Both the position numbers and the translations under genes were made by a program. This document shows, one piece after another, positions 9,451 through 54,000 of a stretch of DNA of 64,000 bases. The notes below the pieces were generated by a model that saw only the letters and a program-made list of their open reading frames with translations, ran no database searches and was not told the DNA's origin. The stretch is from Macrostomum lignano (taxonomy: Eukaryota), in assembly GCA_002269645.1 (NCBI GenBank), contig NIVC01002289.1:122501-186500 (forward strand). Reading direction: 5' to 3'. Position 1 is the first letter of the stretch; each line of letters starts with the position of its first letter.

Positions 9451-9545
9451 CCCGTATCGTTATTTTTCGTCACTACCTCCCCGTACCGGGAGTGGATAAT
9501 TTGCGCACCTGCTGCCTTCCTTAGATGCGGTAGCCGTTTCTCAGG
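9451..9545 (-). pseudogene. Isolated ~95-nt fragment of eukaryotic 18S rRNA
   Basis: The reverse complement reads CCTGAGAAACGGCTACCGCATCTAAGGAAGGCAGCAGGTGCGCAAATTATCCACTCCCGGTACGGGGAGGTAGTGACGAAAAATAACGATACGGG, a conserved 18S core segment. The flanks are not rDNA. Confidence 0.9.
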
Positions 9546-9993
9546 ATTTATGTGAATCCTTTAATTATACGGAAAACACATTTTTAAAAAGCATTCCTAT
9601 TTCTTTTTAATAAATCACCTTATTCGAGGAACATATTTTAAAGAATGGAAATATTTTTTTGAATAAACTACGAGTACATATTGCTTCTGACCTCTCAGTC
9701 TCAGCCTTGACATCTCAGCAATCCCCCCAGTAAGCCTTGAAATCTCAGTGGGTCCCCAGTAAGCCCCCCTCGACATTTCAGCAATCTAGTGGGTGACCCC
9801 TATTCGGGACGGCCAATAAGCTAGGAGCAAAAATTATTCATGTAAATCCATTAAAAAGGCACATTTTCTTAAGAAACAATTCCTTCTTGACTTCAGTTTT
9901 TTAAATCACCTTATTCGAGTAAAATTGTCATGGTCAAAGATGTTTTTTATGAATCTCTTTTTTTCTAAATGTAACAAAGGAACATAACAATAT

Positions 9994-12353: not shown

Positions 12354-13445
12354 TCAGGCTTCAGGCTTTAATCCTGTTGAGGTCGGCAAGGAGATCGCCG
12401 AGTTTGTATTATTAGTCTTCGTCGCCTTCCTGCCCGGTAGACCGAGCATTAGTGTATCCACGAAGGCCTGTCGGAATCCGTGGCCAATAAAATAGACGAA
12501 CGGATCCAGTACGTTGTGCAGAAACTGAACCGCATGAAAGATATTATAGTACATATCCAGCTGGGCTTCCGGCAGTACTTGTGTGCCTATGATTTTGTAG
12601 AAATAGCCTTCGAGCAGTGACAAACCAGCTCTTGGACCGTGCGAAAAGAAGAACATGAAATTCATGAAGATCATCACAATGCAAGCCGTCACAAGCTTCT
12701 TTTGCTTCACTTTGTCCACGCCAGCTGACAATTTTGCAACGTTTCGCTGCTGCAGAATCAAAGTGACGCCCACGCTCACGCTTGCGGCCAACAGGTAGAT
12801 AAACAGTCCCATAGTGCTCATGTAGAAGTCGATGTGATAATGAATCGGATCTAGCTTTAATAGAAACTCAAAACTCGGATGTTCGTCACATTTCCCATCA
12901 ACGTAGCCCTGCTGAATACTCCAGATAGTTGGGGCAACACTGCCTAGAAGAAATAGAGCAACCAGCATAATATAATTATTCCTCATTGTCATAATACTTT
13001 TCACCTTTAGCGGTAGCACTACAGCGAGGACTCTCTCGGTGGTGAGGGCCACAAGAAAAAAGGGCGCGCCGTTTAACAGGAACTTCTGTAAATAGTTAAT
13101 GAAGTGACACGCGGCTACGCTGTCGTGCTGCCGACCCATGAATGTGCTGTCTAACTTCGTTGGTGCAAACTTCAATACCCAGAACTTATGATAGTAATAA
13201 GTGCCGCTCACTGACAGGACAACAATGTCTGATGCCGTGATTATCAGCATGTTTAGGCGAGATATTTTGGGGAAGATTGACCTGCCTCGATAGATAGTGA
13301 TAAAGCAGAGCAGATTGAATAGAATGCCAAACGCTAAGAGTGACGGCATTAGCCAGATGACGATGTTGTCGAACGCCCAGCGCCAACCTGGAATCTCGAA
13401 CCACTTCAACTCGGTGTCCGTGTCATTTCCCTGCTGACCCGCCAT
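12354..13445 (-). CDS. Intronless class A (rhodopsin-like) orphan peptide-receptor-like GPCR, 363 aa
   Basis: Seven hydrophobic segments; FGILFN in TM1, ITASD in TM2, C-x-F-I-N-Y in TM3, ALTTERVLAVVLPL (E/DRY position) and DPFVY (NPxxY position). ATG at 13445. Confidence 0.88.
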   Translation of the reverse strand: MAGQQGNDTDTELKWFEIPGWRWAFDNIVIWLMPSLLAFGILFNLLCFITIYRGRSIFPKISRLNMLIITASDIVVLSVSGTYYYHKFWVLKFAPTKLDSTFMGRQHDSVAACHFINYLQKFLLNGAPFFLVALTTERVLAVVLPLKVKSIMTMRNNYIMLVALFLLGSVAPTIWSIQQGYVDGKCDEHPSFEFLLKLDPIHYHIDFYMSTMGLFIYLLAASVSVGVTLILQQRNVAKLSAGVDKVKQKKLVTACIVMIFMNFMFFFSHGPRAGLSLLEGYFYKIIGTQVLPEAQLDMYYNIFHAVQFLHNVLDPFVYFIGHGFRQAFVDTLMLGLPGRKATKTNNTNSAISLPTSTGLKPEA

Positions 13446-22498: not shown

Positions 22499-24272
22499 CC
22501 TTAGTGTATTCAAGGGGTTCTTAGACACCCCTCATATCTCTGCATCTGTTCGACCGATTTTGATGATAATTTATACAAACATGGGTCTATATTTTGATGG
22601 ATTCAGTGCTAGAGTTTCAGCTTGGTCGTATAGACAGAACGAAAGCAATCGATCATTTACTGACGAACCTGCGAAAATAGCAATACGATTTTAAGCACAT
22701 AACAAAACGTACAAGCAAAAGGGGCAAACGGTTCAAGTTGGCAAGTTCCCAAACTTCAAAAATCAGATCACCAATCATGAAAATCTTCGAAGTAATCACC
22801 GTTCCGTTGAATGCACTTGTCATACCGCATCGGCAGCTCTTCGATCCATCCTAACCACGTGTCTCTAGGAGTCGCTCTGATGAGCCCCTCAACAGCCGTT
22901 TGCAGCTCGGGGAAGCTTGCGAACCTCTTGCCTCTCAGCTGCGCCTTGACGTGTCCAAAAAGACCATAGTCAGACGGTGCCAAATCAGGCGAGTAGGGCG
23001 GATGCTGCCACTGCTGGAATCTGAGGCTGTCGATGTGAGAGCGAGTGAGGGCTGCCGAGTGCGGCCGGGCATTGTCGCAGTGCAGCAGGACGCCCTTGCG
23101 CACGATCCGACGCCGTTGCAGTAGCTCCTGTCTCAGCCTCGTGAGCTCGTCACAAAACCGCTCGCTGTTCTGTGTCTGGCCCTGGCCGTACCACGTGAAC
23201 ATGAGGGGCCCGCTCGCATCCCAAAAAACACTTAACATGATCTTCTTGGGATAGGTGCCTGCGCTTTCGACGTCACCGCCGCCGCCGCCCCTCGGAAGCC
23301 AGGCCCTCGACTCCCGCCGGGAGAGTGGGTCGTACAGGGCAAACATGGACTCATCTTGAGTTACAAATCTGCTTTTGAACTCGTCTCCCAGAGCTGAAAT
23401 TGCCGCCCTTTGTTGCAAGCAGACTTCGTATCGGCGATTTTTCTGCTCGGCAGTTAGCAGTCTTGGCACCCATCGAGAGACCAGCTTTGACAGACCAAGA
23501 TGCTCGTGCAGAATTTGGAAGACCGAGCCACACGAAATCCCGGCGGCATTGGCCAACTCGTCAATAGTGATGTGGCCGTTTTCACTTACCAGCTCTTCGA
23601 TCAGGATGGCACTGCTGTCGTTGACTGCAGTAGCTGGTCGGCCTGAACGTGGCTTGTCCTGCACGCTCATTTCGCCGTCCTTTCTCTTCCGGACCCAGTT
23701 CGCGACGGTTGCTCGACAGCAGGCATCATCTCCAAAACGGCTGACTAATCTCTGGTGGATAGTGTTCACGGACATGCCTTCGTCCGCAAAAGCAAAAACG
23801 ATCAGGCGCTGCGAAACTTTATCGCCATATGCACTAGCCATTCTTAAACCATCTGAGGTTGGTTCTGCATCTCAGCATTTCAATCTGACGTTCATTCTGC
23901 GCACTCAGTCTAATGCTGCCTACTGCTTTGTTCTATCTTTTTTTGTCTATGGCTAAACCCTCACAGCTTGAAAGTAATGATTAATCAATACTCACCGAAA
24001 GCTTTTATTCCTCTAAAAACAAGCTGCGATTTCACAACCCCCCCCCCCAGTTTAGTGAGGTCCAGATCCGATGCTGTTCAAAATCGTATTGCTAATTTCG
24101 TAGGTTCGTCAGTAAATGATCGATTGCTTTCGTTCTGTCTATACGACCAAGCTGAAACTCTAGCACTGAATTAATCAAATATAGACCCATGTTTGTATAA
24201 ATTCTCATCAAAATCGGTCAAACAGATGCAGAGATATGAGGGGTGTCTAAGAACTTTTTGAATGCACTAAGG
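22499..24272 (-). mobile_element. Full-length mariner (DD34D) transposon, 1774 bp, ~194-bp TIRs, TA TSD
   Basis: TIRs at 22499-22692 and 24080-24272 are near-perfect inverted copies. TA lies at 22497-22498 and 24273-24274. The element encloses an intact transposase ORF. Confidence 0.95.
22768..23841 (-). CDS. Mariner transposase, 357 aa, uninterrupted
   Basis: HTH region, RSGRP, WVPRLLT, TQDES (D1), HCDNARPH (D2) and PPYSPDLAPSDY (D3). There are 34 residues between D2 and D3. Confidence 0.97.
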   Translation of the reverse strand: MASAYGDKVSQRLIVFAFADEGMSVNTIHQRLVSRFGDDACCRATVANWVRKRKDGEMSVQDKPRSGRPATAVNDSSAILIEELVSENGHITIDELANAAGISCGSVFQILHEHLGLSKLVSRWVPRLLTAEQKNRRYEVCLQQRAAISALGDEFKSRFVTQDESMFALYDPLSRRESRAWLPRGGGGGDVESAGTYPKKIMLSVFWDASGPLMFTWYGQGQTQNSERFCDELTRLRQELLQRRRIVRKGVLLHCDNARPHSAALTRSHIDSLRFQQWQHPPYSPDLAPSDYGLFGHVKAQLRGKRFASFPELQTAVEGLIRATPRDTWLGWIEELPMRYDKCIQRNGDYFEDFHDW

Positions 24273-38616: not shown

Positions 38617-39697
38617 GCGCGTGAGCAGTTTTTCAGACAAGGATGTTGCGAAGTGAAATGGAGTTAGCAATTAAATTTTATCGCGTGCTATCAAATGACA
38701 ATTAATATTAAATTTTTAAGGCTGATGACGAGAGTGTGCGTTCAAAATCCGTAGATACTACGGTAACTTCTAGTGGTCCCTGGTTTTTGTTTCGATTTAG
38801 TAGTTGATCCGGGACATATATGTTTAGAACCGGGGTAGATCTCGAATTTTGAGAGAGCTATTTGTCCAGAATTCAATGACACGATAAAATGACCCCAGCT
38901 GAAGCAAAGCAGATGATCCTCAAAGAGACAGATATTTTGACCCGTCCCTGTGACCCCTGGCTGGCGTGACCCCCAGACCAAAATGGTTGTAGCAGTCAAT
39001 TGTTGTAGACCCATCCCGAGTGCCTAAGGTCCCAGGCTTTGAGTAGATATGATAGATTAGAGAATGTGAGCCGGGATTGTGTCTCTGGTCTTGTGATACG
39101 ACGTATATAGCTCCCGAGAAAGGCATGTTTCATCTCTCACGGAACAAGAATAACGATAAAAGCAATAGAAAGTAAGTTATCGCTGTTGCCTCATGTGTCT
39201 TACTTTTCCTCCTCTCTATAAAGAACCCTCTCACTCGATAGCCTGCACCGTTGATAAATAAACAAGATTGCGTTGCGTCACTTATAAATGTTTTTAAACT
39301 TTCTAAGTAAATATTTATGTCTATATTTTCTCTCTAATTCTCAACCAAAATTTGTTTATTTGACTCTCTTTTAAAAGAGCTCTTTAACAGTTTGAATACA
39401 GTAATCGCTGTGTTAGTTTAGTTGAACAGCTACTGTATTAGATACATTTAATTGATTTTTTTCTTAGTGGATTTTTATTGTACTCTTATGTCTACTATCA
39501 GTAAAGCAGAAAGCAAAAGTTGACTATAGTTTATGCTGGGTATTTTGTTGTATTTTAATGTCGGCTTTTATATTCGATATATTGTGGCGGTCTAGCCAAG
39601 CACATTTAAATATAAATACGCTGGAGAGGTCTATACATGTAGCTCACTACTTCTTTACTGCAACTGAAACTACACCTGTTATACAAAGATTTATTTA

Positions 39698-39946
39698 GCA
39701 CGCGAAGGTGTATTCAGCACGCCAGTGAAGTATGAGACAGACCAGGCCTATGGGCTACGGTCTGCGATGCTTCACGCCTGCCCCTATCTTCAGCAGGTCA
39801 AGGCTGGAGAGGGAGGTCTGCACCCGCTATTTGCCGCTGGCAGCCGCAGACCCCCCCTCACGCTGTTTCACAAGTCGACCCAGGGTACTCGTCCCCGCGT
39901 GTGTTTAAGGCAGACCCTAGGGCTGCTGGACAGACTGGGCTCCGAC
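39698..39946 (+). ncRNA. HDV-like self-cleaving ribozyme at the LINE 5' end, with a long structured J1/2 insertion
   Basis: P1 GCACGCG (39698-39704) / CGCGUGU (39896-39902) with G1-U wobble; P3 GGG/CCC closing L3 UACUCGU; P1.1 AC (39887-39888) / GU (39903-39904); P4 hairpin ~39905-39930; J4/2 CAGAC with C39931; P2 GUCGACCCA (39874-39882) / UGGGCUCCGAC (39936-39946). Confidence 0.85.
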
Positions 39947-40166
39947 GCTGGCGACCCATCCAGTGGCTTCGGCCGAATTTGGGTATGCGGGTCTGGCTTG
40001 CCAGCCTGCAGGCCGTGGTACTGCTTAACGTACCCCTAATGCCTAAGGTGTTTGACCGTGCCGATGGGCTGGAAGGCCGGGGGGTTGTCCGGTCGCTAGC
40101 GGTCCTTTTCTTTTTCTTCTTTCCTCTTTCTTTTGTGACTCAGCTCACTCCTTCCCGCTTTCAGCT

Positions 40167-41633
40167 ATGGCGTCATCCGCCTCTTTAACCCCCGCTGAAG
40201 CCGGGGCCCCGGCAACTCCGGCCGGTGACTCTGGCACCAGCGCCGCCCCACCGGGGGCAGATGGGCTTGCCGCCGGCTCGGCCGGTGACATGCCCGCACG
40301 CGCAACCGGGCCCTCCGCTGAAGCCCGACGCACCCGCAACCAACGCCGCAACGAGCGGCGACGGCGACTACGGGGTACTGCGGGCCGGCCACCGGCGGAG
40401 GGGGAACCTAGGGAGGGCGAGGCTGCTGTTGGGCCGAAAGGAACCACAGCAACCCCTGCCCCCCAGGATACAACCCCCGCTGGTGAGCCACCCAGTATAC
40501 CTGCTACAAGCGCGGCCGGGCCTTCGGGAACCGCCGCCACCAACTACGCCTCAAAGGTCAAGCTCCAACCGGCGGTCATCGTCTTCGGGGAAGAGCAGGA
40601 CCTCACGGCCGACGAGCTCGACAGTGCCTGGCGCACCATCGATGCTGCGCTCATCGACCAGCTCCTGGCGGGCCGCCCTGTGAGCGTGGTCAAGTCTGCC
40701 AAGACCGACGGCTGCATCTTCATCTGGTGCAGCTCGGAGGAGAGCAGCCGCAATCTACGCGAGCTTCTGCCAAAGCTGAACTGGCCCAAGAAGCTCGGCA
40801 AGCTCGTCTTCGCCAGCGAGGGCGAACGACAGAAGACCCAGCGCTTTCGCGTCTGGATCCCGGCCGGCAGTGCCATTAAGTCCGGAGATCAGCTTAGGCA
40901 AATATTGCTAAAGCTGCACCCCGACCTTAAGGTCAACGGGCTCCTACACCACGCCACTTCCCGCAAGGAGAAGGGGGCTACGGTGATCCTAGGGCTCTCT
41001 GATGACTGGGCTAAGCGCTTGCCGCCTAAGTCCACAATTCATATTGGTCTGACTCAGCTGACCATCCTCCGTTGCGAGGAGTGGAAAGCTGATGAAGCCA
41101 AGAATGCCAAAGCTTCCGAAACCGGAACTGGGGCCCAGGCTCCTCCGGCAAAGAAGCCGAGGCAAACGGCCGATCCTATGCCCGGTAAGGCAGTTCGCGC
41201 TGCTGAAACCGGAAATCGCAATCGCAGACCCGCCAGGAGCACCCGGAGGTCCGGCCTGATCCAGCGCGCGCTGGACCAGGCCAAGAACCTTCGTGCGCAT
41301 CGTGAGCGGGCCCGCGCTTCTCGCGCTCCACCCCAACAGCCAGAAGGCCAGACTCTAAGCGGGGAGGCTCCGACCGACTGGTTCGAGTCTGTGACTCACC
41401 AGGAGGCTGGCGCCACCCGCATCGACCTGACCGACGAGGCAGAGGGGACGGGCAGTGACAGCACCGAAGCACGCAGGGGAGGCGACGGTAACGTCCACGC
41501 TGGGCTCACGTCCGCGGAGGACTCCACAGCCACCCTAACTGCTGAGGACGCTGAAACTCCCATGGAGGTCTGCGGGTCACCCACCACTGAAAAGGAGGAG
41601 GATGACCTGCTCAACGATTCCCCAACTGCGTGA
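40167..41633 (+). CDS. LINE ORF1 (gag-like, DUF4780-like core, no CCHC knuckles seen), 488 aa
   Basis: Open ORF directly upstream of ORF2. Low-complexity basic N- and C-termini surround a folded core (GCIFIWCSSEES...FRVWIP...LKLHPDL...GATVILGL). Confidence 0.85.
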   Translation: MASSASLTPAEAGAPATPAGDSGTSAAPPGADGLAAGSAGDMPARATGPSAEARRTRNQRRNERRRRLRGTAGRPPAEGEPREGEAAVGPKGTTATPAPQDTTPAGEPPSIPATSAAGPSGTAATNYASKVKLQPAVIVFGEEQDLTADELDSAWRTIDAALIDQLLAGRPVSVVKSAKTDGCIFIWCSSEESSRNLRELLPKLNWPKKLGKLVFASEGERQKTQRFRVWIPAGSAIKSGDQLRQILLKLHPDLKVNGLLHHATSRKEKGATVILGLSDDWAKRLPPKSTIHIGLTQLTILRCEEWKADEAKNAKASETGTGAQAPPAKKPRQTADPMPGKAVRAAETGNRNRRPARSTRRSGLIQRALDQAKNLRAHRERARASRAPPQQPEGQTLSGEAPTDWFESVTHQEAGATRIDLTDEAEGTGSDSTEARRGGDGNVHAGLTSAEDSTATLTAEDAETPMEVCGSPTTEKEEDDLLNDSPTA

Positions 41634-41635
41634 TA

Positions 41636-44600
41636 ATGATCAGCAACCAGGGAATCCATTGCCTGCAGATTAATCTGCAGCACTGCGTCGCAGCCTCGGT
41701 CAACCTTATGCGTTACGCCGAGCTCGACAAGCCGGGGCTCATCCTCGTCCAGGAACCCTGGACTCTCAGAGGTAAGCCTCAAAACGCCCCTGCTGGCTAC
41801 AATTGTTTTTATACTTACCCTCGCGAGGCCAACCAGCCTCCCAGAGCTTGCATCTTTGCGAGCAAAACGCTCAGTGCGTGGCTCAGATCGGACCTGTCCA
41901 ACAGGGACATCTGCGTCATCCAATCCGAGGACCTTCTTCCTGGGAAGACCACCCTCATTGCCTCGGTTTACCTACCAGGCGATGCTGCGGTCGTCCCCAG
42001 AGCCCTCGCTACGCTGGTAGAGCTCTGCTCTGCCAAAAACTACGAGCTCATGGTTGCCGGCGACATCAACGCCCACCACACTCACTGGGGCAGCACTGGC
42101 ATTAATCAGAGAGGCGAAGACCTCCTAGCCTACGTTGCCTCTACGACCCTCGAGTTCTGCAACTCTGGGTCCACCCCTACCTTTGACAACGGACGGTGGT
42201 CGGAGGTGATCGACGCTACGCTCGCAACGCCCAGACTCTACCAGAGTATTGGGGCGTGGCGGGTGCTTCCAGTGTCCTCACTATCGGATCACAAGTTCAT
42301 CTCCTTCAACCTAATGGCCGCGCGTAGCGCAACTCGTGTTATGTGGAGACGGAACGCCAGAAATACGGATTGGGAAACCTTCGGGCTCGCCCTGAAGGAA
42401 TTCCATCGGTCTCCTGGCCAACCATCCACGATCACGTCGTGCCGAGAGGCGGATGAGTGCGCGACTGTTTTGACAGAGACGCTAACCGCCGCCTTTGAGG
42501 CGTCCTGCCCTTTAAAAGCCTATAAAGGGAAAAAATCGGCGCCGTGGTGGAATCCCGAGCTCGGCAACCTCGTCGCAGGGCTAAGAGACTCCACCGCAGA
42601 GCAACTAAAACTAAGAGCCCTGCAGACCAAACCGCCTATCATGAAGCAATTCATGAGTTTAAAAGGCAGGTTAGGAATGCAAAGGCTCAAAAATGGCGAC
42701 AATACTGTGAGGAGCTAGAGGGCTCACGCCCCACCTCCAGAGTTGTGAAAGCGCTCACGCTGACAAAATGTCTAAGCTCTCCTCGGTCAAACGCACCGAC
42801 GGTACGTCCACGGACAACCCAGGGGAAACGCTTGATGTAATGCTCACTGCGTTTTTCCCTAACGAGCCAGCTAACCAGACCACTCCGGATCACTCGGAGG
42901 GAGGTCACGCGCTGGCTGCATCTATCATCACGGAGGACCGCATTGTGAGAGCGGCAAATTCCTTCAAGCCTTTCAAAGCCCCAGGACCCGACGGCATTGT
43001 ACCGGCCCTTCTAAGAGAGGCGGTTAAATGCCCAGGCTTCCTGCGCAAACTTTGCAGCCTTCTTCGGGCATGCATCACGCTTGGTTATGTCCCACAGGCT
43101 GGACCGAGGCAAAGGTGATTTTCATCCCTAAGCCAGGCCGCCCGGACTACCATTCTATCAAATCCTTCAGACCGATCAGCTTGACCTCCTCCCTGGTCAA
43201 GCTGATGGAGAGACTGGTGCTTGGCGCCTTCTCTCTGTTGAGCTGAAGAACAAACCTCTCAGCGAGAACCAGCACGCTTTTCGGGCGGGTCGCTCCACTG
43301 AAAGCGCGCTGCACGTCCTGGTCGATAAACTCGAGAAGGCCGTGCTTGGTAGTGGCTTTGCTCTGGGGATCTTCCTGGACATCATTGGCGCCTTCGATAA
43401 CGTCCTCTTTGAGGCGTTCCGAAGAGCTCTTTGTGAGAGGCTAACGCACTCACATCTCACCAGATGGATCATGTACATGATCAGCCATCGCACGGCCACC
43501 GCCAGTCTGCTGGGCTACCAGAGGACGGTCCCCGTCTGCAAAGGTAGCCCGCAAGGTGGGGTGCTGTCTCCAGTTCTCTGGAATATGGTCATCGATGAGC
43601 TCCTCCGGGATGTTCGGCCTGACCCCATTCTGAAAGTTGGATATGCGGACGATGTCACCGCGGTGGCATCTGGTCCGTCCCCTGATACCCTCAGGGACCT
43701 TCTTCAGAACTTCATCTACGCTGCTGAGCAATGGGCGGACCGCTGTGGTTTAAGGCTCTCTGAGACTAAGACCGCAGCGATCATGTTCACCAGCAGGACC
43801 AAGTGGCAGATTCGGCCGCTCACGCTTTACGGAAGGGAAATCCCCTTCTGCAAGCAGACTAAATGTCTGGGTATTACCCTGGACCACAGGCTGAACTGGT
43901 CACCCCACGTTCAAACAAAAGCCAAAAAGGCCTTCGCAGTCCTCGCGCAATTGCGCAGGGCTGTCGGCACCACCTGGGGGCTCACCCCCAAGCGCCTCTG
44001 GTGGATCTACACTGCAATGGTTAGGCCCGCTATCTCGTATGGCGGCCTGATCTGGGCTAGCGCCCTGCAGATAAAGACCTGTCTAGAGGCTCTCAGGAGA
44101 GCGCAAGGGCGCGCTTGTCGCACGATCATGAGCGCCCCTCCGTCTGCTCCTTACGATGGCCTCAACGCCTTCCTCAACATTCCTCCGCTGGACATCTTTG
44201 TCCGCAGGGAAGCGGCTAAGACTGCCCGCCGTCTAGCTGACGCTGGCATTCGAATCCAGCCCCATAGGGCCATGGCTAAGCGCAAGCTTCTGCCCCACGC
44301 TGACCTCTGCCTCAAGGACTTGAGAGACAGCGGCGGGCTCCACGTCCTATCTGACGGCGAACCCCGCACTCTCAACCTCTTTCAGCGCTACAAGGTCACC
44401 ATCCCCTCTAGGGATGCTGCCAATGACCACTGGAATTTCCAGGAGGTCCATTGTTACACGGACGGATCCATCAAAGACGGTCGCGCCGGCTTTGGGGTCT
44501 GCATCATCATCAACGGCCGCGTAATTGCCACGCATGCCCAGCACACTGGTAGACTCTCCACAGTCTTCCAGAACGAAGTCCTTGCCATCAGCTCTTGCGC

Positions 44601-45335
44601 TGCAGAGCTGAACGCCAAGGTTACGAGAGGAAAGACTATTGTCATCCACTCCGACAGCCAAGCGGCCTTACAGGCCCTTTGCCACACCACAACGAACTCC
44701 CGGACAGTCGCCGACTGCGCCCGGCAGCTCAACCTCCTGGCCAGAAGCAATACTGTCAGGCTGAAGTGGATCCCAGGGCACGCAGGGTTTCCGGGGAACG
44801 AGCTGGCAGACACCCTCGCCAAGAGGGGCGGCTCTGGCTCTTTTTTCGGCCCTGCCCCCCTGGTCCCTATGCCCTTGACAGTCATCAATCGTCAGATCGA
44901 CGACTGGGCTGACTCCCTCCACAGGGACAGATGGGCGGGCACCCAAAACTGCCGGCAATCTCGTGCCGCGGTTCCTTGCCCGTCTCACAGGCTCAGAAAC
45001 ATCCTTCTGAACCAGAATCGGAAGGATATTCGAGCCCTTGTCATGACCCTTACCGGCCATGGCTACCTCGCCAGGCACTGCTTCCTCCGAGGCGACCTCG
45101 GAGCGAAATTTGCCCCTTTTGCGAGTGCGACAATGAAGATGCTCAGCACTTTGTCTGTCACTGCCCTTTCTTTAACAGAGACCGGCTACGCTACCTCGGG
45201 CCGAACCCGTCCATTGACGAGGTTTGCCAGCCCGACAGCATCCCACGGCTCATCCAGTTCCTTCGGGCGACTAGACGAGCCAGTTTCTTCCCAACGGAAG
45301 ATCACGCTGCAGGACGGACCGGCGGACCACCCTGA
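41636..45335 (+). pseudogene. LINE ORF2 (APE endonuclease, reverse transcriptase, RNase H, C-terminal CX2CX8HX4C), broken by five -1 frameshifts as assembled
   Basis: LQINLQH, LVQEPW, GDINAHH, PTF, SDH (APE); FRPISLTS, QHAFRAGRSTE, GSPQGGVLSP, YADD, KCLG (RT); YTDGS, NEVLA, SDSQAAL, WIPGH, GNELAD (RNase H); CPFCECDNEDAQHFVCHC. Shifts at ~42570, ~42762, ~43097, ~43221 and ~45100. Confidence 0.92.
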
Positions 45336-46634
45336 CCGGCCCCACGCTTCTGCCTGTCTGCGGGCCTTCAGGGGCTAGCGGAATGGGCGAGCCTCGCCTC
45401 CCCGCTGTGTCTACGGACCACCCTGCAGCGAAGCTAAGCTAAGATTTATTTATATTTTTTATTCTTAATATAGAAAGAATTCATCTACAAATACAATGAA
45501 AAACGTATACATTCGTCATATATTAGCAAGATCATTGCACCGAATCCAGGTACTTTCTGGATGAAATCAGGCTAAAATTACTGACTAGTGTTAACTAATA
45601 ATTACTTTAGTAACTGCAGTAGCCAGCAATGTAGCCACAATGAAAAAATGCAAGAAAGCTAAAGCAGAGTTTGTCAGTAAACAGCACACGAATAAATATG
45701 TCATTGTGCTGAGTCGCCAATACATTCCGAGACAGACTGACTGCAGGTGCTCGGAGCAACAGTACCGTTGGCAGGTAGTGCAGTGTGCGCGAGTTTGCGA
45801 TCAGCTGATCGGCTACTCATGAGGCATCTTCCCTTCCCTTCAAGGTTGTTACTTGAAAAAGTCCTTGATAGAGCACGTATTGCAAAATCACGCCTACATG
45901 AGCTGTACTTCACTGCATGAGTAGCACTTTGTCAGCTGGTCCATCAAGTCAGGGCCTCCTTTGGTCTCATTGTAATGCGGATTTGCTTGCGGCTTTCTTG
46001 CTGCGTTGTTAGACATTGTGGGGCTTATGTGCTAAGTAGATCGAGTAGTGGTAGACACGGCGACACCCTCACCAGCAAAAAACGGACGCGCAACTGGGCG
46101 TTTCGTCGACTGCCTGCTGGCCAACAGAGGGCCCAGTTGCAAGGTCTGTTTATCACCTTGGGAATTTGCCGCTTACACAGCCATAGACAGCCTCTGTGTA
46201 CTTTTACAAAACCGACAGTTACGCTTCTCTGATTGCCGATCATTATTACAACTAGTTAATTAATCTAAAACAAACGTCAAAACTTGAAAGCAAGACATAC
46301 AAAATGCAACGCACCAAGTACATGCTTCAGCAGCACCAACAGCAGCAACATTATGACCTGCTTTTTGGCGGAGACAGATTTAATTCGACCAATGACATGA
46401 GCTGAATGTTTGCATCCACCGGACTAGAAGCCTCAAATCAAATTCTTGCGCACGTGCCACTGTTTCAATCTTAGTATGTGTCTCCACCTGTTCTATTGTC
46501 TGCCTCTATTTGCCGCTTTGACTTAAAACTAGTATATAGGATTTGCAGGAAATGCATTTGCCCAGGGAGACAGACAGGGAGACAGACACAAACAGACAGG
46601 CAGACAGACATTGAGGACCGGCAGAGAGACACTT

Positions 46635-46638
46635 AGTG

Positions 46639-46679
<41 letters not shown>

Positions 46680-46727
46680 GGCAGGCAGACAGGCAGGCAG
46701 ACAGGCAGGCAGGCAGACAGACAGGCA

Positions 46728-48065: not shown

Positions 48066-51000
48066 CTACGCAGCGGACACGTACTCATAGTAGGCGGTGG
48101 GCACGTAGCCCTGCTCACCAGCGGCCTCGCCGTGCAGGCGGCGAACCAGCGACCAGTCCGGGTCGCGCTGCAGGACTTCCACTTGTTCGCCAGCCGATAC
48201 GGCCAGGTTGTCCGACTGGCTGGTGTCCGCGAAGTCGTACAGCATCTCCGCTGTGGCCGCTGCTGGGGCTGCCGCTGCTGCGCCTTCGACAGGCGGCTGC
48301 AGAGTCTGCGGCGTCGGCTGGTGCTGAGGGGACTCGTCGGCGAACTCGTCTGCGAATGCCGTGGCCGGGCTGGCGGCGACGAAGAGGGTGGGGTGTGAAA
48401 GAAGGGTTAGAAGGGGAATTCTCATAGGGAAAGAAGGGGAATTCTCATTGGGAAAGAAGGGGAATTCTCATCGGGAAAGAAGGGGAATTCTCATCGGGAG
48501 AGAAAAGGAATTCTCATAGGGAGAAAAGAGGAATTCTCATAGTGAGAGAAGAGGAATTCTCATAGTGAGAGAAGAGGAATTCTCATAGTGAGAGAAGAGG
48601 AATTCTCATAGTGAGAGAAGAGGAATTCTCATAGGGAGAGAAGAGGAATTCTCATAGTGAGAGAAGAGGAATTCTCATAGTGAGAGAAGAGGAATTCTCA
48701 TAGTGAGAGAAGAGGAATTCTCATAGTGAGAGAAGAGGAATTCTCATAGGGAGAGAAGAGGAATTCTCATAGGGAGAGAAGGGGAATCCTCATAGGGAGA
48801 GAAGAGGAATTCTCATAGTGAGAGAAGAGGAATTCTCATAGTGAGAGAAGAGGAATTCTCATAGGGAGAGAAGAGGAATTCTCATAGGGAGAGAAGAGGA
48901 ATCCTCATAGGGAGAGAAGAGGAATTCTCATAGTGAGAGAAGAGGAATTCTCATAGGGAGAGAAGAGGAATTCTCATAGTGAGAGAAGAGGAATTCTCAT
49001 AGGAGAGAAGAGGAATTCTCATAGGGAGAGAAGAGGAATTCTCATAGGGAGAGAAGAGGAATTCTCATAGTGAGAGACGAGGAATTCTCATAGGGAGAGA
49101 AGAGGAATTCTCATAGGGAGAGAAGAGGAATCCTCATAGGGAGAGAAGAGGAATTCTCATAGTGAGAGAAGAGGAATTCTCATAGGGAGAGAAGAGGAAT
49201 TCTCATAGTGAGAGAAGAGGAATTCTCATAGGAGAGAAGAGGAATTCTCATAGGGAGAGAAGAGGAATTCTCATAGGGAGAGAAGAGGAATTCTCATAGT
49301 GAGAGAAGAGGAATTCTCATAGGGAGAGAAGAGGAATTCTATAGTGAGAGAAGAGGAATTCTCATAGTGAGAGAAGAGGAATTCTCATAGGGAGAGAAGA
49401 GGAATCCTCATAGGGAGAGAAGAGGAATTCTCATAGGGAGAGAAGAGGAATCCTCATAGGGAGAGAAGAGGAATTCTCATAGTGAGAGAAGAGGAATTCT
49501 CATAGGGAGAGAAGAGGAATTCTCATAGTGAGAGAAGAGGAATTCTCATAGGGAGAGAAGAGGAATCCTCATAGGGAGAGAAGAGGAATTCTCATAGGGA
49601 GAGAAGAGGAATTCTCATAGGGAGAGAAGAGGAATTCTCATAGGAGAGAAGAGGAATTCTCATAGGGAGAGAAGAGGAATTCTCATAGGGAGAGAAGAAG
49701 AATTCTCATAGGGAGAGAAGAAGAATTCTCATAGTGAGAGAAGAGGAATTCTCATAGGGAGAGAAGAGGAATTCTCATAGGGAGAGAAGAGGAATTCTCA
49801 TAGGGAGAGAAGAGGAATTCTCATAGGAGAGAAGAGGAATTCTCATAGGGAGAGAAGAGGAATTCTCATAGTGAGAGAAGAGGAATTCTAATAGAGAGAG
49901 AAGAGGAATTCTCATAGGGAGAGAAGAGGAATTCTCATAGGAGAGAAGAGGAATTCTCATAGGGAGAGAAGAAGAATTCTCATAGGGAGAGAAGAAGAAT
50001 TCTCATAGTGAGAGAAGAGGAATTCTCATAGGGAGAGAAGAGGAATTCTCATAGGGAGAGAAGAGGAATTCTCATAGGGAGAGAAGAGGAATTTTCATAG
50101 GGAGAGAAGAAGAATTCTCATAGTGAGAGAAGAGGAATTCTCATAGGGAGAGAAGAGGAATCCTCATAGGGAGAGAAGAGGAATTCTCATAGAGAGAGAG
50201 AAGAGGAATTATCATAGGTATAGAAGGGGAATTCTCATAGGGAGAGAAGAGGAATTCTCATAGTGAGAGAAGAGGAATTCTCATAGGGAGAGAAGAGGAA
50301 TTCTCATAGGGAGAGAAGAGGAATTCTCATAGGGAGAGAAGAGGAATTCTCATAGGGAGAGAAGGGGAATTCTCATAGGGAGAGAAGGGGAATCCTCATA
50401 GGGAAAGAAGGGGAATCCTCATAGGGAGAGAAGGGGAATCCTCATAGGGAGAGAAGGGGAATCCTCATAGGGAGAGAAGGGGAATCCTCATAGGGAAAGA
50501 AGGGGAATCCTCATAGGGAGAGAAGGGAATCCTCATAGGGAGAGAAGGGGAATCCTCATAGGGAAAGAAGGGGAATTCTCATAGAGAGAGAAGAGGAATT
50601 CTCAAAGGGAGAGAAGAGGAATCCTCATAGGGAGAGAAGAGGAATTCTCATAGGAGAGAAGAGGAATTCTCATAGGGAGAGAAGAGGAATTCTCATAGGG
50701 AGAGAAGAGGAATTCTCATAGGAGAGAAGAGGAATTCTCATAGGGAGAGAAGAAGAATTCTCATAGGGAGAGAAGAGGAATTCTCATAGGGAGAGAAGAG
50801 GAATTCTCATAGTGAGAGAAGAGGAATTCTCATAGGGAGAGAAGAGGAATCCTCATAGGGAGAGAAGAGGAATTCTCATAGTGAGAGAAGAGGAATTCTC
50901 ATAGGGAGAGAAGAGGAATTCTCATAGGGAGAGAAGAGGAATTCTCATAGGGAGAGAAGAGGAATTCTCATAGTGAGAGAAGAGGAATTCTCATAGGGAG

Positions 51001-54000
51001 AGAAGAGGAATTCTCATAGGAGAGAAGAGGAATTCTCATAGGGAGAGAAGAAGAATTCTCATAGGGAGAGAAGAGGAATTCTCATAGGGAGAGAAGAGGA
51101 ATTCTCATAGGGAGAGAAGAGGAATTTTCATAGGGAGAGAAGAGGAATTCTCATAGGGAGAGAAGAGGAATCCTCATAGGGAGAGAAGAGGAATTCTCAT
51201 AGGGAGAGACGAGGAATTCTCATAAGGAGAGAAGAGGAATTCTCATAGAGAGAGAAGAGGAATTATCATAGGTATAGAAGGGGAATTCTCATAGGGAGAG
51301 AAGAGGAATTCTCATAGGGAGAGAAGAGGAATTCTCATAGGGAGAGAAGAGGAATTCTCATAGGGAGAGAAGGGGAATTCTCATAGGGAGAGAAGGGGAA
51401 TCCTCATAGGGAAAGAAGGGGAATCCTCATAGGGAGAGAAGGGGAATCCTCATAGGGAGAGAAGGGGAATCCTCATAGGGAAAGAAGGGGAATCCTCATA
51501 GGGAGAGAAGGGGAATCCTCATAGGGAGAGAAGGGGAATCCTCATAGGGAGAGAAGGGGAATCCTCATAGGGAGAGAAGGCGAATCCTCATAGGGAGAGA
51601 AGAGGAATTCTCATAGAGAGAGAGAAGAGGAATTATCATAGGTATAGAAGGGGAATTCTCATAGGGAGAGAAGAGGAATTCTCATAGTGAGAGAAGAGGA
51701 ATTCTCATAGGGAGAGAAGAGGAATTCTCATAGGGAGAGAAGAGGAATTCTCATAGGGAGAGAAGAAGAATTCTCATAGGGAGAGAAGAGGAATCCTCAT
51801 AGGGAGAGAAGGGGAATCCTCATAGGGAGAGAAGAGGAATTCTCATAGAGAGAGAGAAGAGGAATTATCATAGGTATAGAAGGGGAATTCTCATAGGGAG
51901 AGAAGAGGAATTCTCATAGTGAGAGAAGAGGAATTCTCATAGGGAGAGAAGAGGAATTCTCATAGGGAGAGAAGAGGAATTCTCATAGGGAGAGAAGAAG
52001 AATTCTCATAGGGAGAGAAGAGGAATCCTCATAGGGAGAGAAGAGGAATCCTCATAGGGAGAGAAGAGGAATTCTCATAGGAGAGAAGAAGAATTCTCAT
52101 AGGGAGAGAAGAGGAATTCTCATAGGGAGAGAAGAGGAATCCTCATAGGGAGAGAAGAGGAATTCTCATAGTGAGAGAAGAGGAATTCTCATAGGGAGAG
52201 AAGAGGAATTCTCATAGGAGAGAAGAGGAATTCTCATAGGAGAGAAGAAGAATTCTCATAGGGAGAGAAGAGGAATTCTCATAGGGAGAGAAGAGGAATC
52301 CTCATAGGGAGAGAAGAGGAATTCTCATAGTGAGAGAAGAGGAATTCTCATAGGGAGAGAAGAGGAATTCTCATAGGGAGAGAAGAGGAATTCTCATAGG
52401 GAGAGAAGAGGAATTCTCATAGTGAGAGAAGAGGAATTCTCATAGGGAGAGAAGAGGAATTCTCATAGGAGAGAAGAGGAATTCTCATAGGGAGAGACGA
52501 GGAATTCTCATAGGGAGAGAAGAGGAATTCTCATAGGGAGAGAAGAGGAATTCTCATAGGGAGAGAAGAGGAATTTTCATAGGGAGAGAAGAGGAATTCT
52601 CATAGGGAGAGAAGAGGAATCCTCATAGGGAGAGACGAGGAATTCTCATAGGGAGAGAAGAGGAATTCTCATAGGGAGAGAAGAGGAATCCTCATAGGGA
52701 GAGAAGAGGAATTCTCATAGGGAGAGACGAGGAATTCTCATAGGTATAGAAGGGGAATTCTCATAGGGAGAGAAGAGGAATTCTCATAGGGAGAGAAGAG
52801 GAATTCTAATAGAGAGAGAAGAGGAATTCTCATAGGGAGAGAAGAGGAATTCTCATAGGGAAAGAAGGGGAATCCTCATAGGGAGAGAAGAGGAATCCTC
52901 ATAGGGAGAGAAGAGGAATTCTCATAGGGAGAGAAGAGGAATTCTCATAGGGATAGAAGGGGAATTCTCAGGGAGAGAAATGAAGACATGATAATGACAC
53001 AGGGGATTCCTGTTGAAGATATTAAGGCGATCCCTAGTAAGTGACACGCAGAACACGCATTTCGGCGGCGGTCACAAAGTGCACAAAAACGCACCTAGCT
53101 GCACCTCCATCTGTTGCACTGACGCTCATGACACCGGCGCCGGTTCTGCCGCCAAATCCCTTGCCTTCCAGGTCCTTCTGTTAAATTAAACAGGAGCGCA
53201 GACAGTGATCAATCGGCCTGGCGCTAATGTACAAAAATATAGAAATAAAAAAGACAGGAAACTGGTCACCAACCAGTGAGCAGGCGGCACTGCTGGCGCT
53301 CGTGCTGGGGCTGAAGTGCCGCGTCACCAGGTCGAGCCGGAAGCGGCGCTTTTTGTCGCCGCCGCTGGCCAGAGAGGAGATGGAGCGGGACTTCCGCATG
53401 GGCTTGACGGGCTGGCCAACTGATGCGGCCTGAGGGTCCGCGCCGCCGCCTCCGTTGCAGCTGGTCAGGTCCTGCGGCACGGTGGGGTCTCAGCTATTTA
53501 TCCAGTGCTAACAGCCAGTCTGAGCTATTTATCCAGGGCTAACAGCCAGTCTCAGCTATTTATCCAGGGCTAACAGCCAGTCTGAGCTATTTATCCAGGG
53601 CTAACAGCCAGTCTGAGCTATTTATCCAGTGCTAACAGCCAGTCTGAGATATTTATCCAGTGCTAACAGCCAGTCTGAGCTATTTATGCAGGGCTAACAG
53701 CCAGTCTGAGATATTTATCCAGGGCTAACAGCCAGTCTGAGATATTTACCCAGTGCTAACAGCCAGTCTGAGCTATTTATGCAGGGCTAACAGCCAGTCT
53801 GAGCTATTTATCCAGGGCTAACAGCCAGTCTGAGCTATTTATCCAGGGCTAACAGCCAGTCTGAGCTATTTATTCAGGGCTAACAGCCAGTCTGAGCTAT
53901 TTATCCAGTGCTAACAGCCAGTCTGAGCTATTTATCCAGTGCTAACAGCCAGTCTGAGCTATTTATCCAGTGCTAACAGCCAGTCTGAGCTATTTATCCA

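What the first reader, a model, noticed from the sequence alone, without database searches (positions are those of the whole stretch)
39698..39946. HDV-like self-cleaving ribozyme whose predicted cut site is exactly the TSD-defined first base of a full-length LOA-like LINE
Seen: every element of the nested double pseudoknot can be paired by hand. P1 is 7 bp with a G1-U wobble. P3 is GGG/CCC. The 7-nt L3 UACUCGU keeps U and G at the positions of HDV U20/G25. P1.1 is A-U plus C-G, a compensatory change from HDV C21-G39. J4/2 CAGAC matches C-N-R-A with putative catalytic C39931. P2 CCCA/UGGG matches the HDV genomic junction and extends through bulges. The ~170-nt J1/2 holds its own stems (gtgaagtat/atgcttcac, cagacc/ggtctg, gagggaggtctgc/gcagaccccccctc). 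G1 (39698) directly follows the left TSD, which was found independently. Established: HDV-like ribozymes process the 5' ends of R2, L1Tc/ingi, RTE and insect Baggins (LOA clade) elements. Inference: this copy came from a self-cleaved co-transcript, and I do not know of such a ribozyme being described for this lineage.
Basis: partly seen in the sequence, partly recalled or inferred. Interest (0 to 1): 0.88.

Follow-up and report, generated by a model that had tools for sequence, protein, structure and literature searches.

The report
Self-cleaving ribozyme heading a flatworm LINE
The first 249 bases of a jumping gene (a LINE) in what is almost certainly the flatworm Macrostomum lignano fold like the hepatitis-delta type of self-cutting RNA. 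The predicted cut falls exactly on the element's first base, which makes this a well-supported new example of a trick already known from other LINEs, not a new kind of system.

Summary
Window 39698-39946 can form every helix of an HDV-like nested double pseudoknot. G1 (39698) directly follows a 12-bp target-site duplication that occurs only at the two ends of a 5743-bp APE/RT/RNase H LINE.

The match is not chance. P1 fell on bases 1-7 in 0 of 20,000 dinucleotide shuffles of the 5' UTR.

The key new evidence is a sister element, L141 (63% RT identity, 38% ORF1 identity). Its contig starts at the homologous G1. Its first six bases (GCCUGC) pair perfectly with the six bases after its own P3 (GCAGGC), and both strands differ from the window's GCACGCG/CGCGUGU. 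P2, distal P2, P4 and the large J1/2 domain also covary across four relatives. The L3 U and G and the putative catalytic C are invariant.

Weak points:
- Catalysis is untested.
- Rfam models do not hit.
- The three bases after the C vary.
- The G-U wobble is not conserved.
- "LOA-like" was not verified.
- ORF2 of this copy has several frame breaks.

Verdict: a new member of a known kind, ribozyme-terminated non-LTR retrotransposons. I found no prior description of one in flatworms. Confidence about 0.8, interest moderate.

The parts
39686..39697 (+). Left target-site duplication AAGATTTATTTA
   Evidence: The exact 12-mer occurs only here and at 45441-45452; 0.01 expected by chance.
39698..39704 (+). 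P1 5' strand GCACGCG. G39698 is the predicted first base of the cleaved RNA and the first base of the element.
   Evidence: Pairs 7/7 with 39896-39902. No shuffle placed P1 here. The homologous position is base 1 of contig L141, and both have 32 nt before the conserved GUAUGAGA.
39705..39873 (+). J1/2 peripheral domain: a closing helix plus three hairpins
   Evidence: MFE -70.9 kcal/mol, z = -2.74. L141 has the same architecture, closed by a 9-bp helix, z = -2.77. The two-sequence consensus fold (RNAalifold) finds 6 pairs changed on both sides.
39874..39882 (+). P2 5' strand: distal GUCG (39874-77), bulged A39878, proximal CCCA (39879-82)
   Evidence: Pairs with 39936-39946. Covaries in relatives: GCCG/CGGC, CCCAAA/UUUGGG, CUCAGA/UCUGAG.
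39883..39895 (+). P3 (GGG/CCC) enclosing the 7-nt L3 UACUCGU
   Evidence: P3 is invariant in 4 relatives. L3 reads U-N-Y-Y-C-G-U in all four, so U at position 1 and G at position 6 are kept.
39896..39902 (+). P1 3' strand CGCGUGU, immediately 3' of P3
   Evidence: Differs in all four relatives (CGCGUGU, CGCGAGC, GCAGGCA, GUGGGUG) although it is flanked by invariant P3/L3. Complementary to bases 1-6/7 in both sequences whose 5' end is visible.
39903..39904 (+). P1.1 3' strand GU, pairing with C39888 and A39887 of L3
   Evidence: C-G plus A-U here, U-A plus C-G in L141, C-G plus U.U in L001 and L142.
39909..39927 (+). P4 hairpin GGCAGACC-CUA-GGGCUGCU
   Evidence: 6 Watson-Crick pairs, 1 G-U and 1 A.G here. 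L001 has a perfect 8 bp. L141 (10 bp) and L142 (6 bp) have unrelated sequences that still form a hairpin.
39931..39935 (+). J4/2: putative catalytic C39931 followed by AGAC
   Evidence: A C at this place in all four relatives. The following bases vary: AGA(C), GUG, UGC, and in L142 ACUGA, or UGA counted from its second C.
39936..39946 (+). P2 3' strand: UGGG, a CUC internal loop, distal CGAC
   Evidence: recovered by the unconstrained MFE.
39947..40166 (+). Rest of the 5' UTR: UUCG-capped hairpin 39954-39984, polypyrimidine tract 40107-40140, CAG at 40162-40164
   Evidence: Conserved blocks shared with L001, L140, L141 and L142.
40167..41633 (+). ORF1 (488 aa)
   Evidence: No Pfam hit above threshold; weak DUF4780 match at E = 0.02. 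All named homologues are Macrostomum lignano proteins; the unnamed rest come from Logan, JGI and ENA contigs.
41630..45378 (+). ORF2 (APE, RT, RNase H), broken
   Evidence: Pfam domains found. Frame changes relative to the intact ORF2 of L001 and L141 lie near 42568-42616, about 42790, about 43095, about 43222 and about 45120.
45379..45440 (+). 3' UTR and tail ...CUGCAGCGAAGCUAAGCUAAG
   Evidence: L141 ends in the same ...CUGCAGCUAAG.
45441..45452 (+). Right target-site duplication

Best explanation
The first 249 nt of this LINE encode an HDV-like (delta-type) self-cleaving ribozyme with a large structured J1/2 domain.

Proposed mechanism, with the basis for each step:
1. Inferred: a source copy is transcribed from outside, by read-through from a host or neighbouring promoter.
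2. Shown: the nascent RNA can form P1 (bases 1-7 with the 7 bases after P3), P2/P3, P1.1 and P4. The J1/2 domain closes on itself and brings P1 and P2 together.
3. By analogy with characterised HDV-like ribozymes: the C of J4/2 (C39931) and a bound Mg2+ catalyse attack of the 2'-OH of the upstream base. The cut falls between A39697 and G39698, leaving 5'-OH-G1.
4. Inferred: the cleaved RNA carries the whole ribozyme at its 5' end and is the template for target-primed reverse transcription.
5. Shown: this full-length insertion starts exactly at G1, next to its TSD, so each full-length daughter copy would carry the ribozyme.
6. Inferred by precedent from R2 and L1Tc: the folded 5' end may also help translate the uncapped RNA.
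For: 1. All helices are present, and the nested ones are recovered by the unconstrained MFE.
2. G1 abuts a TSD that is unique in the window.
3. Core plus P1 on base 1 occurred in 0 of 20,000 shuffles and 0 of 20,000 with a second descriptor.
4. Independent replicate: L141 is an intact sister element (ORF2 1232 aa; RT-RNase H 63% and ORF1 38% identical).
   - It starts at the homologous base.
   - Its P1 is GCCUGC/GCAGGC, 6 of 6 Watson-Crick pairs.
   - Core plus P1 on base 1 occurred in 3 of 20,000 shuffles of its UTR.
5. Window versus L001: 4 of 38 helical bases changed, all keeping or improving pairing, against 13 of 29 non-helical bases (Fisher p = 0.002).
6. P2, distal P2 and P4 take 2-3 different sequences in four relatives and always pair. 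P3, the U and G of L3 and the J4/2 C are invariant.
7. The J1/2 domain is conserved and closed near its ends. Structured J1/2 domains are known to activate large HDV-like ribozymes (PMC4908430). R2 ribozymes have J1/2 loops of 23 to more than 700 nt (PMC3774820).
8. P1' immediately 3' of P3/L3 is what defines the cleavage site in this class (PMC3774820).
Against: - No cleavage data exist.
- No Rfam HDV-family model matches, even at E <= 10, in the window, L001 or L141. This is expected for models that ignore pseudoknots and assume a short J1/2, but it is still a negative result.
- The bases after the putative catalytic C are not conserved. Only the window and L142 fit C-N-R-A; L001 has GUG and L141 has UGC.
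- The G1-U wobble is G1-C in L141, and the last P1' base in L001 is C.
- The second P1.1 pair is U.U in L001 and L142.
- P1 covariation rests on only two sequences, because the L001 and L142 contigs are cut off inside J1/2.
- L141's start at G1 could be an assembly-graph break rather than an RNA end.
- Relatives at 42% RT identity (L122, L123) show no HDV-like core.
Confidence: 0.8

Rival explanations
1. The region is a conserved structured 5' UTR, for example an internal promoter, an IRES-like platform or a binding site for the element's proteins. It happens to share the delta-type topology but does not cut itself. The 5' end at G1 would then be a transcription start site, as in LINEs with internal promoters.
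For: - Full-length LINE copies start at the transcript's first base however that end is made, so the TSD boundary alone does not discriminate.
- The variability of J4/2 and the loss of the G-U wobble in relatives are unexpected for a strongly selected active site.
- There is no Rfam hit.
- In L1Tc the same 77 nt act as both promoter and ribozyme (PMC3383444), so promoter function is plausible here too.
Against: A promoter or protein-binding role does not explain three observations:
- The first 6-7 transcribed bases must pair with the bases immediately 3' of an invariant P3/L3, and this pairing is kept through wholesale sequence change in a sister family.
- The L3 U and G are invariant.
- A C sits at the start of J4/2 in all four relatives.
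Confidence: 0.14
2. The family does have a working ribozyme, but this particular copy is a decayed relic whose ribozyme no longer cuts. The feature in the window would then be a fossil.
For: ORF2 of this copy has at least five frame breaks. P4 carries an A.G mismatch and a G-U where L001 has perfect pairs.
Against: - The TSDs are perfect 12/12, so the insertion is young.
- All core helices are intact, and the window copy fits C-N-R-A and the G-U wobble better than its intact relatives do.
- The frame breaks may be long-read indel errors. Both published M. lignano assemblies were built from PacBio reads (PMC5730564), but I do not know which assembly this window comes from.
Confidence: 0.2
3. 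The match is chance: a GC-rich UTR that can be drawn as a double pseudoknot by hand.
For: A loose core descriptor hits 23 times in the 128 kb of the window. Descriptors were tuned after seeing the candidate.
Against: - 0 of 20,000 and 0 of 20,000 shuffles matched for the window, and 3 of 20,000 for the independent L141.
- Helices covary across four relatives.
Confidence: 0.02

Closest known systems
R2 retrotransposon HDV-like ribozymes (Drosophila, Bombyx and many other animals)
   Same: - The ribozyme occupies the 5' end of a non-LTR element.
- P1' lies immediately 3' of a conserved P3/L3.
- P1 is 6-7 bp and evolves by compensatory change.
- J1/2 loops run from 23 to more than 700 nt, and P4 and J4/2 are variable apart from the catalytic C.
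- In some lineages cleavage falls at the element's first base (PMC3774820).
   Different: - R2 has a restriction-like endonuclease and a single ORF.
- R2 is site-specific for 28S rDNA and is co-transcribed by Pol I, and its P1 is often made of 28S sequence.
- The element here has ORF1 plus an APE-RT-RNase H ORF2.
- It inserted in an AT-rich non-rDNA site with a 9-12 bp TSD, and its P1 lies wholly inside the element.
drz-Agam-2 family (Anopheles gambiae), large HDV-like ribozymes
   Same: A stable base-paired domain in J1/2, short linkers and an extended P2 of about 12 bp, which together 'pinch' P1 and P2 (PMC4908430). Here P2 plus distal P2 makes 8-11 pairs, and the J1/2 domain is closed 2-4 nt from P1 and P2.
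   Different: The J1/2 here is about 160-170 nt and multibranched, not a single P1.2 helix. There is no detectable sequence or Rfam-model similarity.
L1Tc/ingi HDV-like ribozyme (L1TcRz / Pr77) of trypanosomatids
   Same: An APE-RT-RNase H type LINE, not site-specific, with the ribozyme in the first bases of the mRNA. It releases the element from longer transcripts (PMC3185411, PMC4035085, PMC6765202).
   Different: L1TcRz is compact (77 nt) and doubles as an internal promoter. The ribozyme here spans 249 nt, and promoter activity is unknown.
Baggins (LOA clade, insects) and RTE HDV-like ribozymes
   Same: [quoted passage not shown] 2011, which I could not read here).
   Different: Clade membership of the present element was not established. 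It comes from a different host phylum. Assigning Baggins to the LOA clade rests on my own knowledge.
Twister-variant ribozymes at the 5' end of Perere-3 (RTE) in Schistosoma mansoni
   Same: Another flatworm LINE whose 5' end is a self-cleaving ribozyme, with TSDs lying right next to the cleavage site (PMC8501958).
   Different: A different ribozyme class (twister) and a different LINE clade. There the TSD supplies the 5' strand of P1; here P1 lies entirely inside the element.

Membership tests
HDV-like (delta-type) self-cleaving ribozymes | Nested double pseudoknot in the order P1-J1/2-P2-P3-L3-P3'-P1'-P1.1-P4-J4/2-P2' | tested here: met
   All helices pair in this order in the window and L141. 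All but the unseen P1 5' strand pair in L001 and L142.
HDV-like (delta-type) self-cleaving ribozymes | P1 of 6-7 bp whose 5' strand starts at the cleavage site and whose 3' strand directly follows P3 (PMC3774820) | tested here: met
   7 bp in the window and 6 bp in L141, both starting at base 1 of the element or contig.
HDV-like (delta-type) self-cleaving ribozymes | Catalytic cytosine at the first position of J4/2 (PMC10879173) | tested here: met
   C39931. A C lies 3-5 nt before P2' in all four relatives. Its catalytic role cannot be tested here.
HDV-like (delta-type) self-cleaving ribozymes | 3-bp P3 closing a roughly 7-nt L3 with a conserved U (first base) and G (penultimate base) | tested here: met
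   GGG/CCC is invariant. L3 reads U-N-Y-Y-C-G-U in all four.
HDV-like (delta-type) self-cleaving ribozymes | P1.1 of 1-2 bp between L3 and the bases after P1' | tested here: met
   Two Watson-Crick pairs in the window and L141. One C-G plus U.U in L001 and L142. One or two pairs is the stated norm (PMC4908430).
HDV-like (delta-type) self-cleaving ribozymes | G-U wobble at the base of P1 | tested here: inconclusive
No paper I could read here states it.
HDV-like (delta-type) self-cleaving ribozymes | Purines after the catalytic C (the C-N-R-A pattern of J4/2 used in descriptors) | tested here: inconclusive
   The window (CAGA) and L142 (CUGA) fit. L001 (CGUG) and L141 (CUGC) do not. In R2 only the C and one A are constrained in this region (PMC3774820).
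HDV-like (delta-type) self-cleaving ribozymes | Match to a curated covariance model (Rfam HDV-family models) | tested here: not met
   No HDV-family hit at gathering score or at E <= 10. Covariance models cannot represent pseudoknots. By my own knowledge the Rfam HDV-family seeds are narrow groups with a short J1/2, so this is a weak negative.
HDV-like (delta-type) self-cleaving ribozymes | Mg2+-dependent self-scission giving a 5'-OH and a 2',3'-cyclic phosphate, abolished by C-to-U | not testable with these tools
   Needs an in vitro transcription and cleavage assay.
Ribozyme-terminated non-LTR retrotransposons | The ribozyme cleavage site coincides with the 5' boundary of full-length insertions | tested here: met
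   The TSD ends at 39697 and G1 is 39698. L141 starts at the homologous base. Only one genomic insertion with a TSD could be examined.
Ribozyme-terminated non-LTR retrotransposons | Transcription as part of a longer co-transcript (no own promoter) | not testable with these tools
   No expression data. A dual promoter/ribozyme as in L1Tc is not excluded.
   No reference LINE set was available. Only the domain order APE-RT-RNase H plus ORF1 is shown, and several clades share it (I, LOA, ingi, Tad1 and others; my own knowledge).

The most novel reading that the evidence does not exclude
The element may use two RNA fates from one co-transcript.

- Fate 1: the ribozyme makes an uncapped full-length RNA starting at G1, which serves as the retrotransposition template.
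- Fate 2: a conserved polypyrimidine-CAG motif lies 2-24 nt before the ORF1 AUG (window 40107-40164; also in L001/L138, L140, L141 and L142). It could be an acceptor for spliced-leader trans-splicing, which M. lignano uses widely (PMC8629364, PMC5730564). That would give a capped, translatable mRNA lacking the ribozyme.
- The unusually conserved 160-170-nt J1/2 domain could be a protein-binding or regulatory module deciding between the two fates.
Probability: 0.1. Interest if true: 0.65.

Novelty: new member of a known kind. Interest (0 to 1): 0.4.

Why it matters
It extends 5'-end processing of LINEs by HDV-like ribozymes to a free-living flatworm and to a LINE family with its own ORF1 type. 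All named homologues of that ORF1 are Macrostomum proteins. The only ribozyme-LINE association in flatworms that turned up in the papers I searched uses twister (Perere-3 of Schistosoma).

It gives a clean natural pair for studying how a large, conserved J1/2 domain supports catalysis: the window copy and L141 share the architecture, have different P1, P2 and P4 sequences, and have a 7-bp versus a 6-bp P1.

For genome annotation of M. lignano, a transgenesis model, it gives a sequence and structure signature for the true 5' ends of this LINE family. It also predicts abundant 5'-OH RNA ends.

It does not change the general picture of how such elements work.

Tried and rejected
- Rfam at gathering score and at E <= 10 on the window, a 101-nt sub-window, L001, L122, L123 and L141: no HDV-family hit.
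- A 14-specified-base pattern scan of the metagenome collection returned only random matches.
- Longer patterns against viral and prokaryotic genome collections: no hit for the 29- and 26-base patterns. The 14 viral-contig hits to the 16-specified-base pattern are about what chance gives and were not checked against the UTR.
- ORF1 word-index searches: the first found one homologue. The second, with an alignment of the conserved core, found none.
- Exact look-up of the window ORF1: not on record.
- The route that worked was an exhaustive HMMER search with the ORF1 core, then cluster listing, then contig look-up.
- L138, L139 and L140 proved too short to reach the ribozyme.
- A compact alternative P1 in L001 (GCUCGC at 76-81, 6 bp) was considered and rejected. 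It is not conserved in register in the window. L001 also carries at least 75 nt of homologous J1/2 upstream of it, so its RNA was not cut there.
- L122 and L123 (42% RT identity) were examined for an HDV-like core by eye, by alignment and by descriptor. None is conserved between them.
- MAFFT alignments of the four cores misplace P4 and P2', so I did not build a covariance model or use the count of structure pairs. Pairs were counted per sequence in a script instead.
- Clade assignment (LOA or other) could not be made. Pfam gives only the generic domains, plus a sub-threshold DUF4780 match in ORF1.
- Three key papers (Webb 2009, Webb & Luptak 2011, Ruminski 2011) are not held in the library.

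Full report
**What is at the coordinates.** The window region 39698-45440 is a 5743-bp, 60% GC insertion in 45-50% GC DNA. It is flanked by the 12-mer AAGATTTATTTA at 39686-39697 and 45441-45452. These are the only two copies of that 12-mer in the window, where 0.01 would be expected by chance. The first three bases of the repeat could instead be microhomology with the element's CTAAG-type tail. That changes the TSD length (9 or 12 bp) but not the 5' boundary, so the element begins at G39698.

The element encodes an ORF1 of 488 aa (40167-41633) with no Pfam family above threshold. It also encodes an ORF2 with APE, RT and RNase H domains. Compared with the intact ORF2 of two relatives, the window ORF2 changes frame near 42568-42616, about 42790, about 43095, about 43222 and about 45120. 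The copy is therefore complete at both ends but not coding-competent as assembled. Both published M. lignano assemblies were built from PacBio reads (PMC5730564). If this window comes from one of them, some breaks may be indel errors.

The best protein hits are Macrostomum lignano proteins, at 96% identity for the RT-RNase H part. All named ORF1 homologues are also from M. lignano. The window is almost certainly from that flatworm or a very close relative.

**The proposed ribozyme.**
- P1: 39698-39704 GCACGCG with 39896-39902 CGCGUGU, six Watson-Crick pairs plus G1-U.
- P2: CCCA/UGGG, extended across a small internal loop by GUCG/CGAC.
- P3: GGG/CCC around the 7-nt L3 UACUCGU.
- P1.1: A39887-U39904 and C39888-G39903.
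- P4: an 8-position hairpin with one G-U and one A.G.
- J4/2: C39931 followed by AGAC.

The order of strands is that of the HDV-like nested double pseudoknot. P1' lies immediately 3' of P3, which is what fixes the cleavage site in this class (PMC3774820). The 169-nt J1/2 insert folds on its own into a domain closed near its two ends (MFE -70.9 kcal/mol, z = -2.74). An unconstrained fold of the whole 249 nt recovers P2, P3, P4 and the J1/2 stems. P1 cannot appear in a nested prediction.

**Is it more than chance?** A loose descriptor of the core alone is unspecific, with 23 hits on the two strands of the window. By itself, being drawable as a double pseudoknot is weak evidence. The strong part is the coincidence with an independently defined boundary.
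- In 20,000 dinucleotide-preserving shuffles of the 469-nt 5' UTR, 727 had a loose core and 41 had a core plus a P1 partner somewhere upstream. None had the partner on bases 1-7.
- A second descriptor, written to fit both the window and a relative, again gave 0 of 20,000.
- Both descriptors were written after seeing the candidate, so the true significance is somewhat lower. It remains high.

**Relatives.** Finding them was the hard part (see Tried and rejected). Four homologous 5' regions are now in hand.
- L001 is a JGI metagenome contig, 74-80% nucleotide identity to the window throughout. It is cut off inside J1/2.
- L141 and L142 are two Logan contigs from run ERR14788467.
- L141 carries an intact sister element: an ORF1 of 525 aa as called (38% identity over the ORF1 core) and an ORF2 of 1232 aa with APE, RT and RNase H (63% identity in RT-RNase H).
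- L142 is cut off inside J1/2.
- L138, L139 and L140 do not reach the ribozyme.

**The decisive comparison.**
- L141 begins at the base homologous to G39698. Both sequences have exactly 32 nt before the conserved GUAUGAGA.
- Its first six bases, GCCUGC, are perfectly Watson-Crick complementary to GCAGGC, the six bases that follow its own P3.
- Neither strand resembles the window's GCACGCG/CGCGUGU.
- In shuffles of L141's UTR, core plus P1 on base 1 occurred 3 times in 20,000.
- The pseudoknot-forming helix that defines the cut site is therefore kept by compensatory change in two families, and in both it starts at base 1.
- P1' is in fact different in all four relatives (CGCGUGU, CGCGAGC, GCAGGCA, GUGGGUG), although it sits between invariant P3/L3 and conserved downstream sequence. 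The same pattern is described for R2 ribozymes (PMC3774820).

**The other helices behave the same way.**
- P2 is CCCA/UGGG, CCCAAA/UUUGGG or C(C)UCAGA/UCUGAG(G).
- Distal P2 is GUCG/CGAC, GCCG/CGGC or GUCG/CGGC.
- P4 has three unrelated sequences of 6-10 bp.
- P3 is invariant, and L3 reads U-N-Y-Y-C-G-U.
- A C opens J4/2 in all four.
- Between the window and L001, 4 of 38 helical bases differ, all keeping or improving pairing, against 13 of 29 non-helical bases (p = 0.002).
- The J1/2 domain of L141 has the same architecture: a closing helix 4 and 2 nt from P1 and P2, then three hairpins (z = -2.77). Six pairs changed on both sides in the two-sequence consensus fold.

Such a closed J1/2 domain with short linkers and an extended P2 is the arrangement shown to accelerate large HDV-like ribozymes by about three orders of magnitude (PMC4908430).

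**What does not fit neatly.**
- No Rfam HDV-family model matches, even at E <= 10 in a 101-nt sub-window. I regard this as a weak negative. Covariance models cannot represent the pseudoknots. By my own knowledge the Rfam HDV-family seeds are narrow groups with a short J1/2. HDV-like ribozymes are also said to have only about five conserved nucleotides (PMC4870747).
- More relevant, the bases after the putative catalytic C vary (AGAC, GUG, UGC, and in L142 ACUGA, or UGA counted from its second C).
- The G1-U wobble is G1-C in L141.
- The second P1.1 pair is U.U in two relatives.
- In R2 ribozymes only the catalytic C and one A are constrained in L4/J4/2, and active-site sequence is otherwise flexible (PMC3774820). 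These deviations lower confidence but do not contradict membership.
- P1 covariation rests on two sequences.
- L141's start at G1 might be an RNA end or an assembly-graph break. The contig runs about 530 nt past the element's 3' end into unrelated sequence. That looks more like a read-through transcript than a repeat consensus, but I could not learn what kind of library the run is.

**Mechanism.**
- Shown: the fold, its conservation, and the coincidence of G1 with the insertion boundary.
- Established for the class: general acid-base catalysis by the J4/2 cytosine with a bound Mg2+, giving 5'-OH on G1 (PMC10879173); release of non-LTR elements from co-transcripts; and possible IRES-like help for translating the uncapped RNA (PMC6765202, PMC3185411).
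- Inferred here: the source copy of this insertion was transcribed from an external promoter and cut itself at A-1/G1. The cut RNA was then reverse-transcribed to its very end, which is why the ribozyme is regenerated intact next to the TSD.
- The main rival is a non-catalytic structured UTR with transcription starting at G1. It does not explain why bases 1-6/7 must pair with P1' through complete sequence turnover. I give it about 0.14.

**Comparison with what is known, and novelty.** HDV-like ribozymes at LINE 5' ends are established for R2, R4, Dong, RTE, Baggins and L1Tc/ingi (PMC3774820, PMC6765202, PMC4035085). Large structured J1/2 domains are known from drz-Agam-2 and R2 (PMC4908430, PMC3774820). 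In the papers I searched, the only ribozyme-LINE link in flatworms is twister in Perere-3 of Schistosoma mansoni (PMC8501958). I found no paper connecting HDV-like ribozymes with Macrostomum or with flatworm LINEs.

This is therefore a new member of a known kind. It is worth a short report and useful for annotation and for ribozyme structure-function work, but it is not surprising to a specialist. More distant relatives (L122, L123; 42% RT identity) have a different conserved 5' UTR without an HDV-like core, so the ribozyme may be confined to the sub-family defined by this ORF1.

**Scores.** Confidence that this is a delta-type self-cleaving ribozyme that sets the element's 5' end: 0.8. Interest: 0.4.

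Noticed in passing
window 39717-39723: A second P1-like heptamer, GCACGCC, lies 19 nt downstream of G1 (AGCACGC is directly repeated at 39697-39703 and 39716-39722). It could pair 6 bp with P1' and give an alternative internal cut site. This recalls the duplicated-P1 model proposed for how the 5' ends of R2 evolve (PMC3774820).
   Followed up: partly
window 40107-40164; also L001 about 505-518, L140 about 285-315, L141 about 580-592, L142 about 420-432: A polypyrimidine tract followed by CAG lies 2-24 nt before the ORF1 AUG in all five related elements. It looks like a 3' splice acceptor. M. lignano uses spliced-leader trans-splicing (PMC8629364, PMC5730564), so ORF1 mRNA might be trans-spliced. 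This is untested.
   Followed up: partly
window 39954-39984: A UUCG-capped hairpin (ACCCA...GGC-UUCG-GCC...UGGGU) lies immediately 3' of the ribozyme and is conserved in L001. Its function is unknown.
   Followed up: no
window 41630-45378: ORF2 of this copy changes frame at least five times relative to the intact ORF2 of L001 and L141, near 42568-42616, about 42790, about 43095, about 43222 and about 45120. This is either real decay or long-read indel error.
   Followed up: partly
L141 1-6492: The contig starts exactly at the predicted G1. It also continues about 530 nt beyond the element's 3' end (...CUGCAGCUAAG at about 5958) into unrelated sequence with minus-strand ORFs. This suggests a ribozyme-cut, 3' read-through transcript, but the library type is unknown.
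   Followed up: partly
window 45424-45443 and L141 about 5948-5958: The element's 3' end is ...CUGCAGC(GAAGC)UAAG, with a short CUAAG-type repeat instead of poly(A). Its last AAG overlaps the TSD, suggesting microhomology-primed reverse transcription.
   Followed up: no
L122 1-450 and L123 1-480: LINEs with 42% RT identity share a different, strongly conserved 5' UTR block (ACUGCAYGUACUCCUC...GGGCAAAGCCUGUCAACCCAAA...) with covarying hairpins. They have no HDV-like core and no Rfam ribozyme hit.
   Followed up: partly
L140 1-200: The 5' UTR of this relative contains a tandem duplication of about 95 nt, covering a segment that is conserved in L001 and the window.
   Followed up: no
window 9469-9606 (-): A fragment matches eukaryotic SSU rRNA (54.9 bits, E = 6e-12) with a large internal gap relative to the model. 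It is probably an rDNA-derived pseudogene fragment.
   Followed up: no
window 22768-23841 (-) and 12354-13454 (-): A Tc1/mariner-type DDE transposase ORF and a rhodopsin-family 7TM receptor ORF. The neighbourhood mixes host genes with other transposons.
   Followed up: no
window 46560-46700 and 49000-53000: (CAGA)n-type microsatellite, and a 4-kb stretch with extreme GC and AT skew (0.55 and 0.39). This fits the high simple-repeat content reported for M. lignano (PMC5730564).
   Followed up: no
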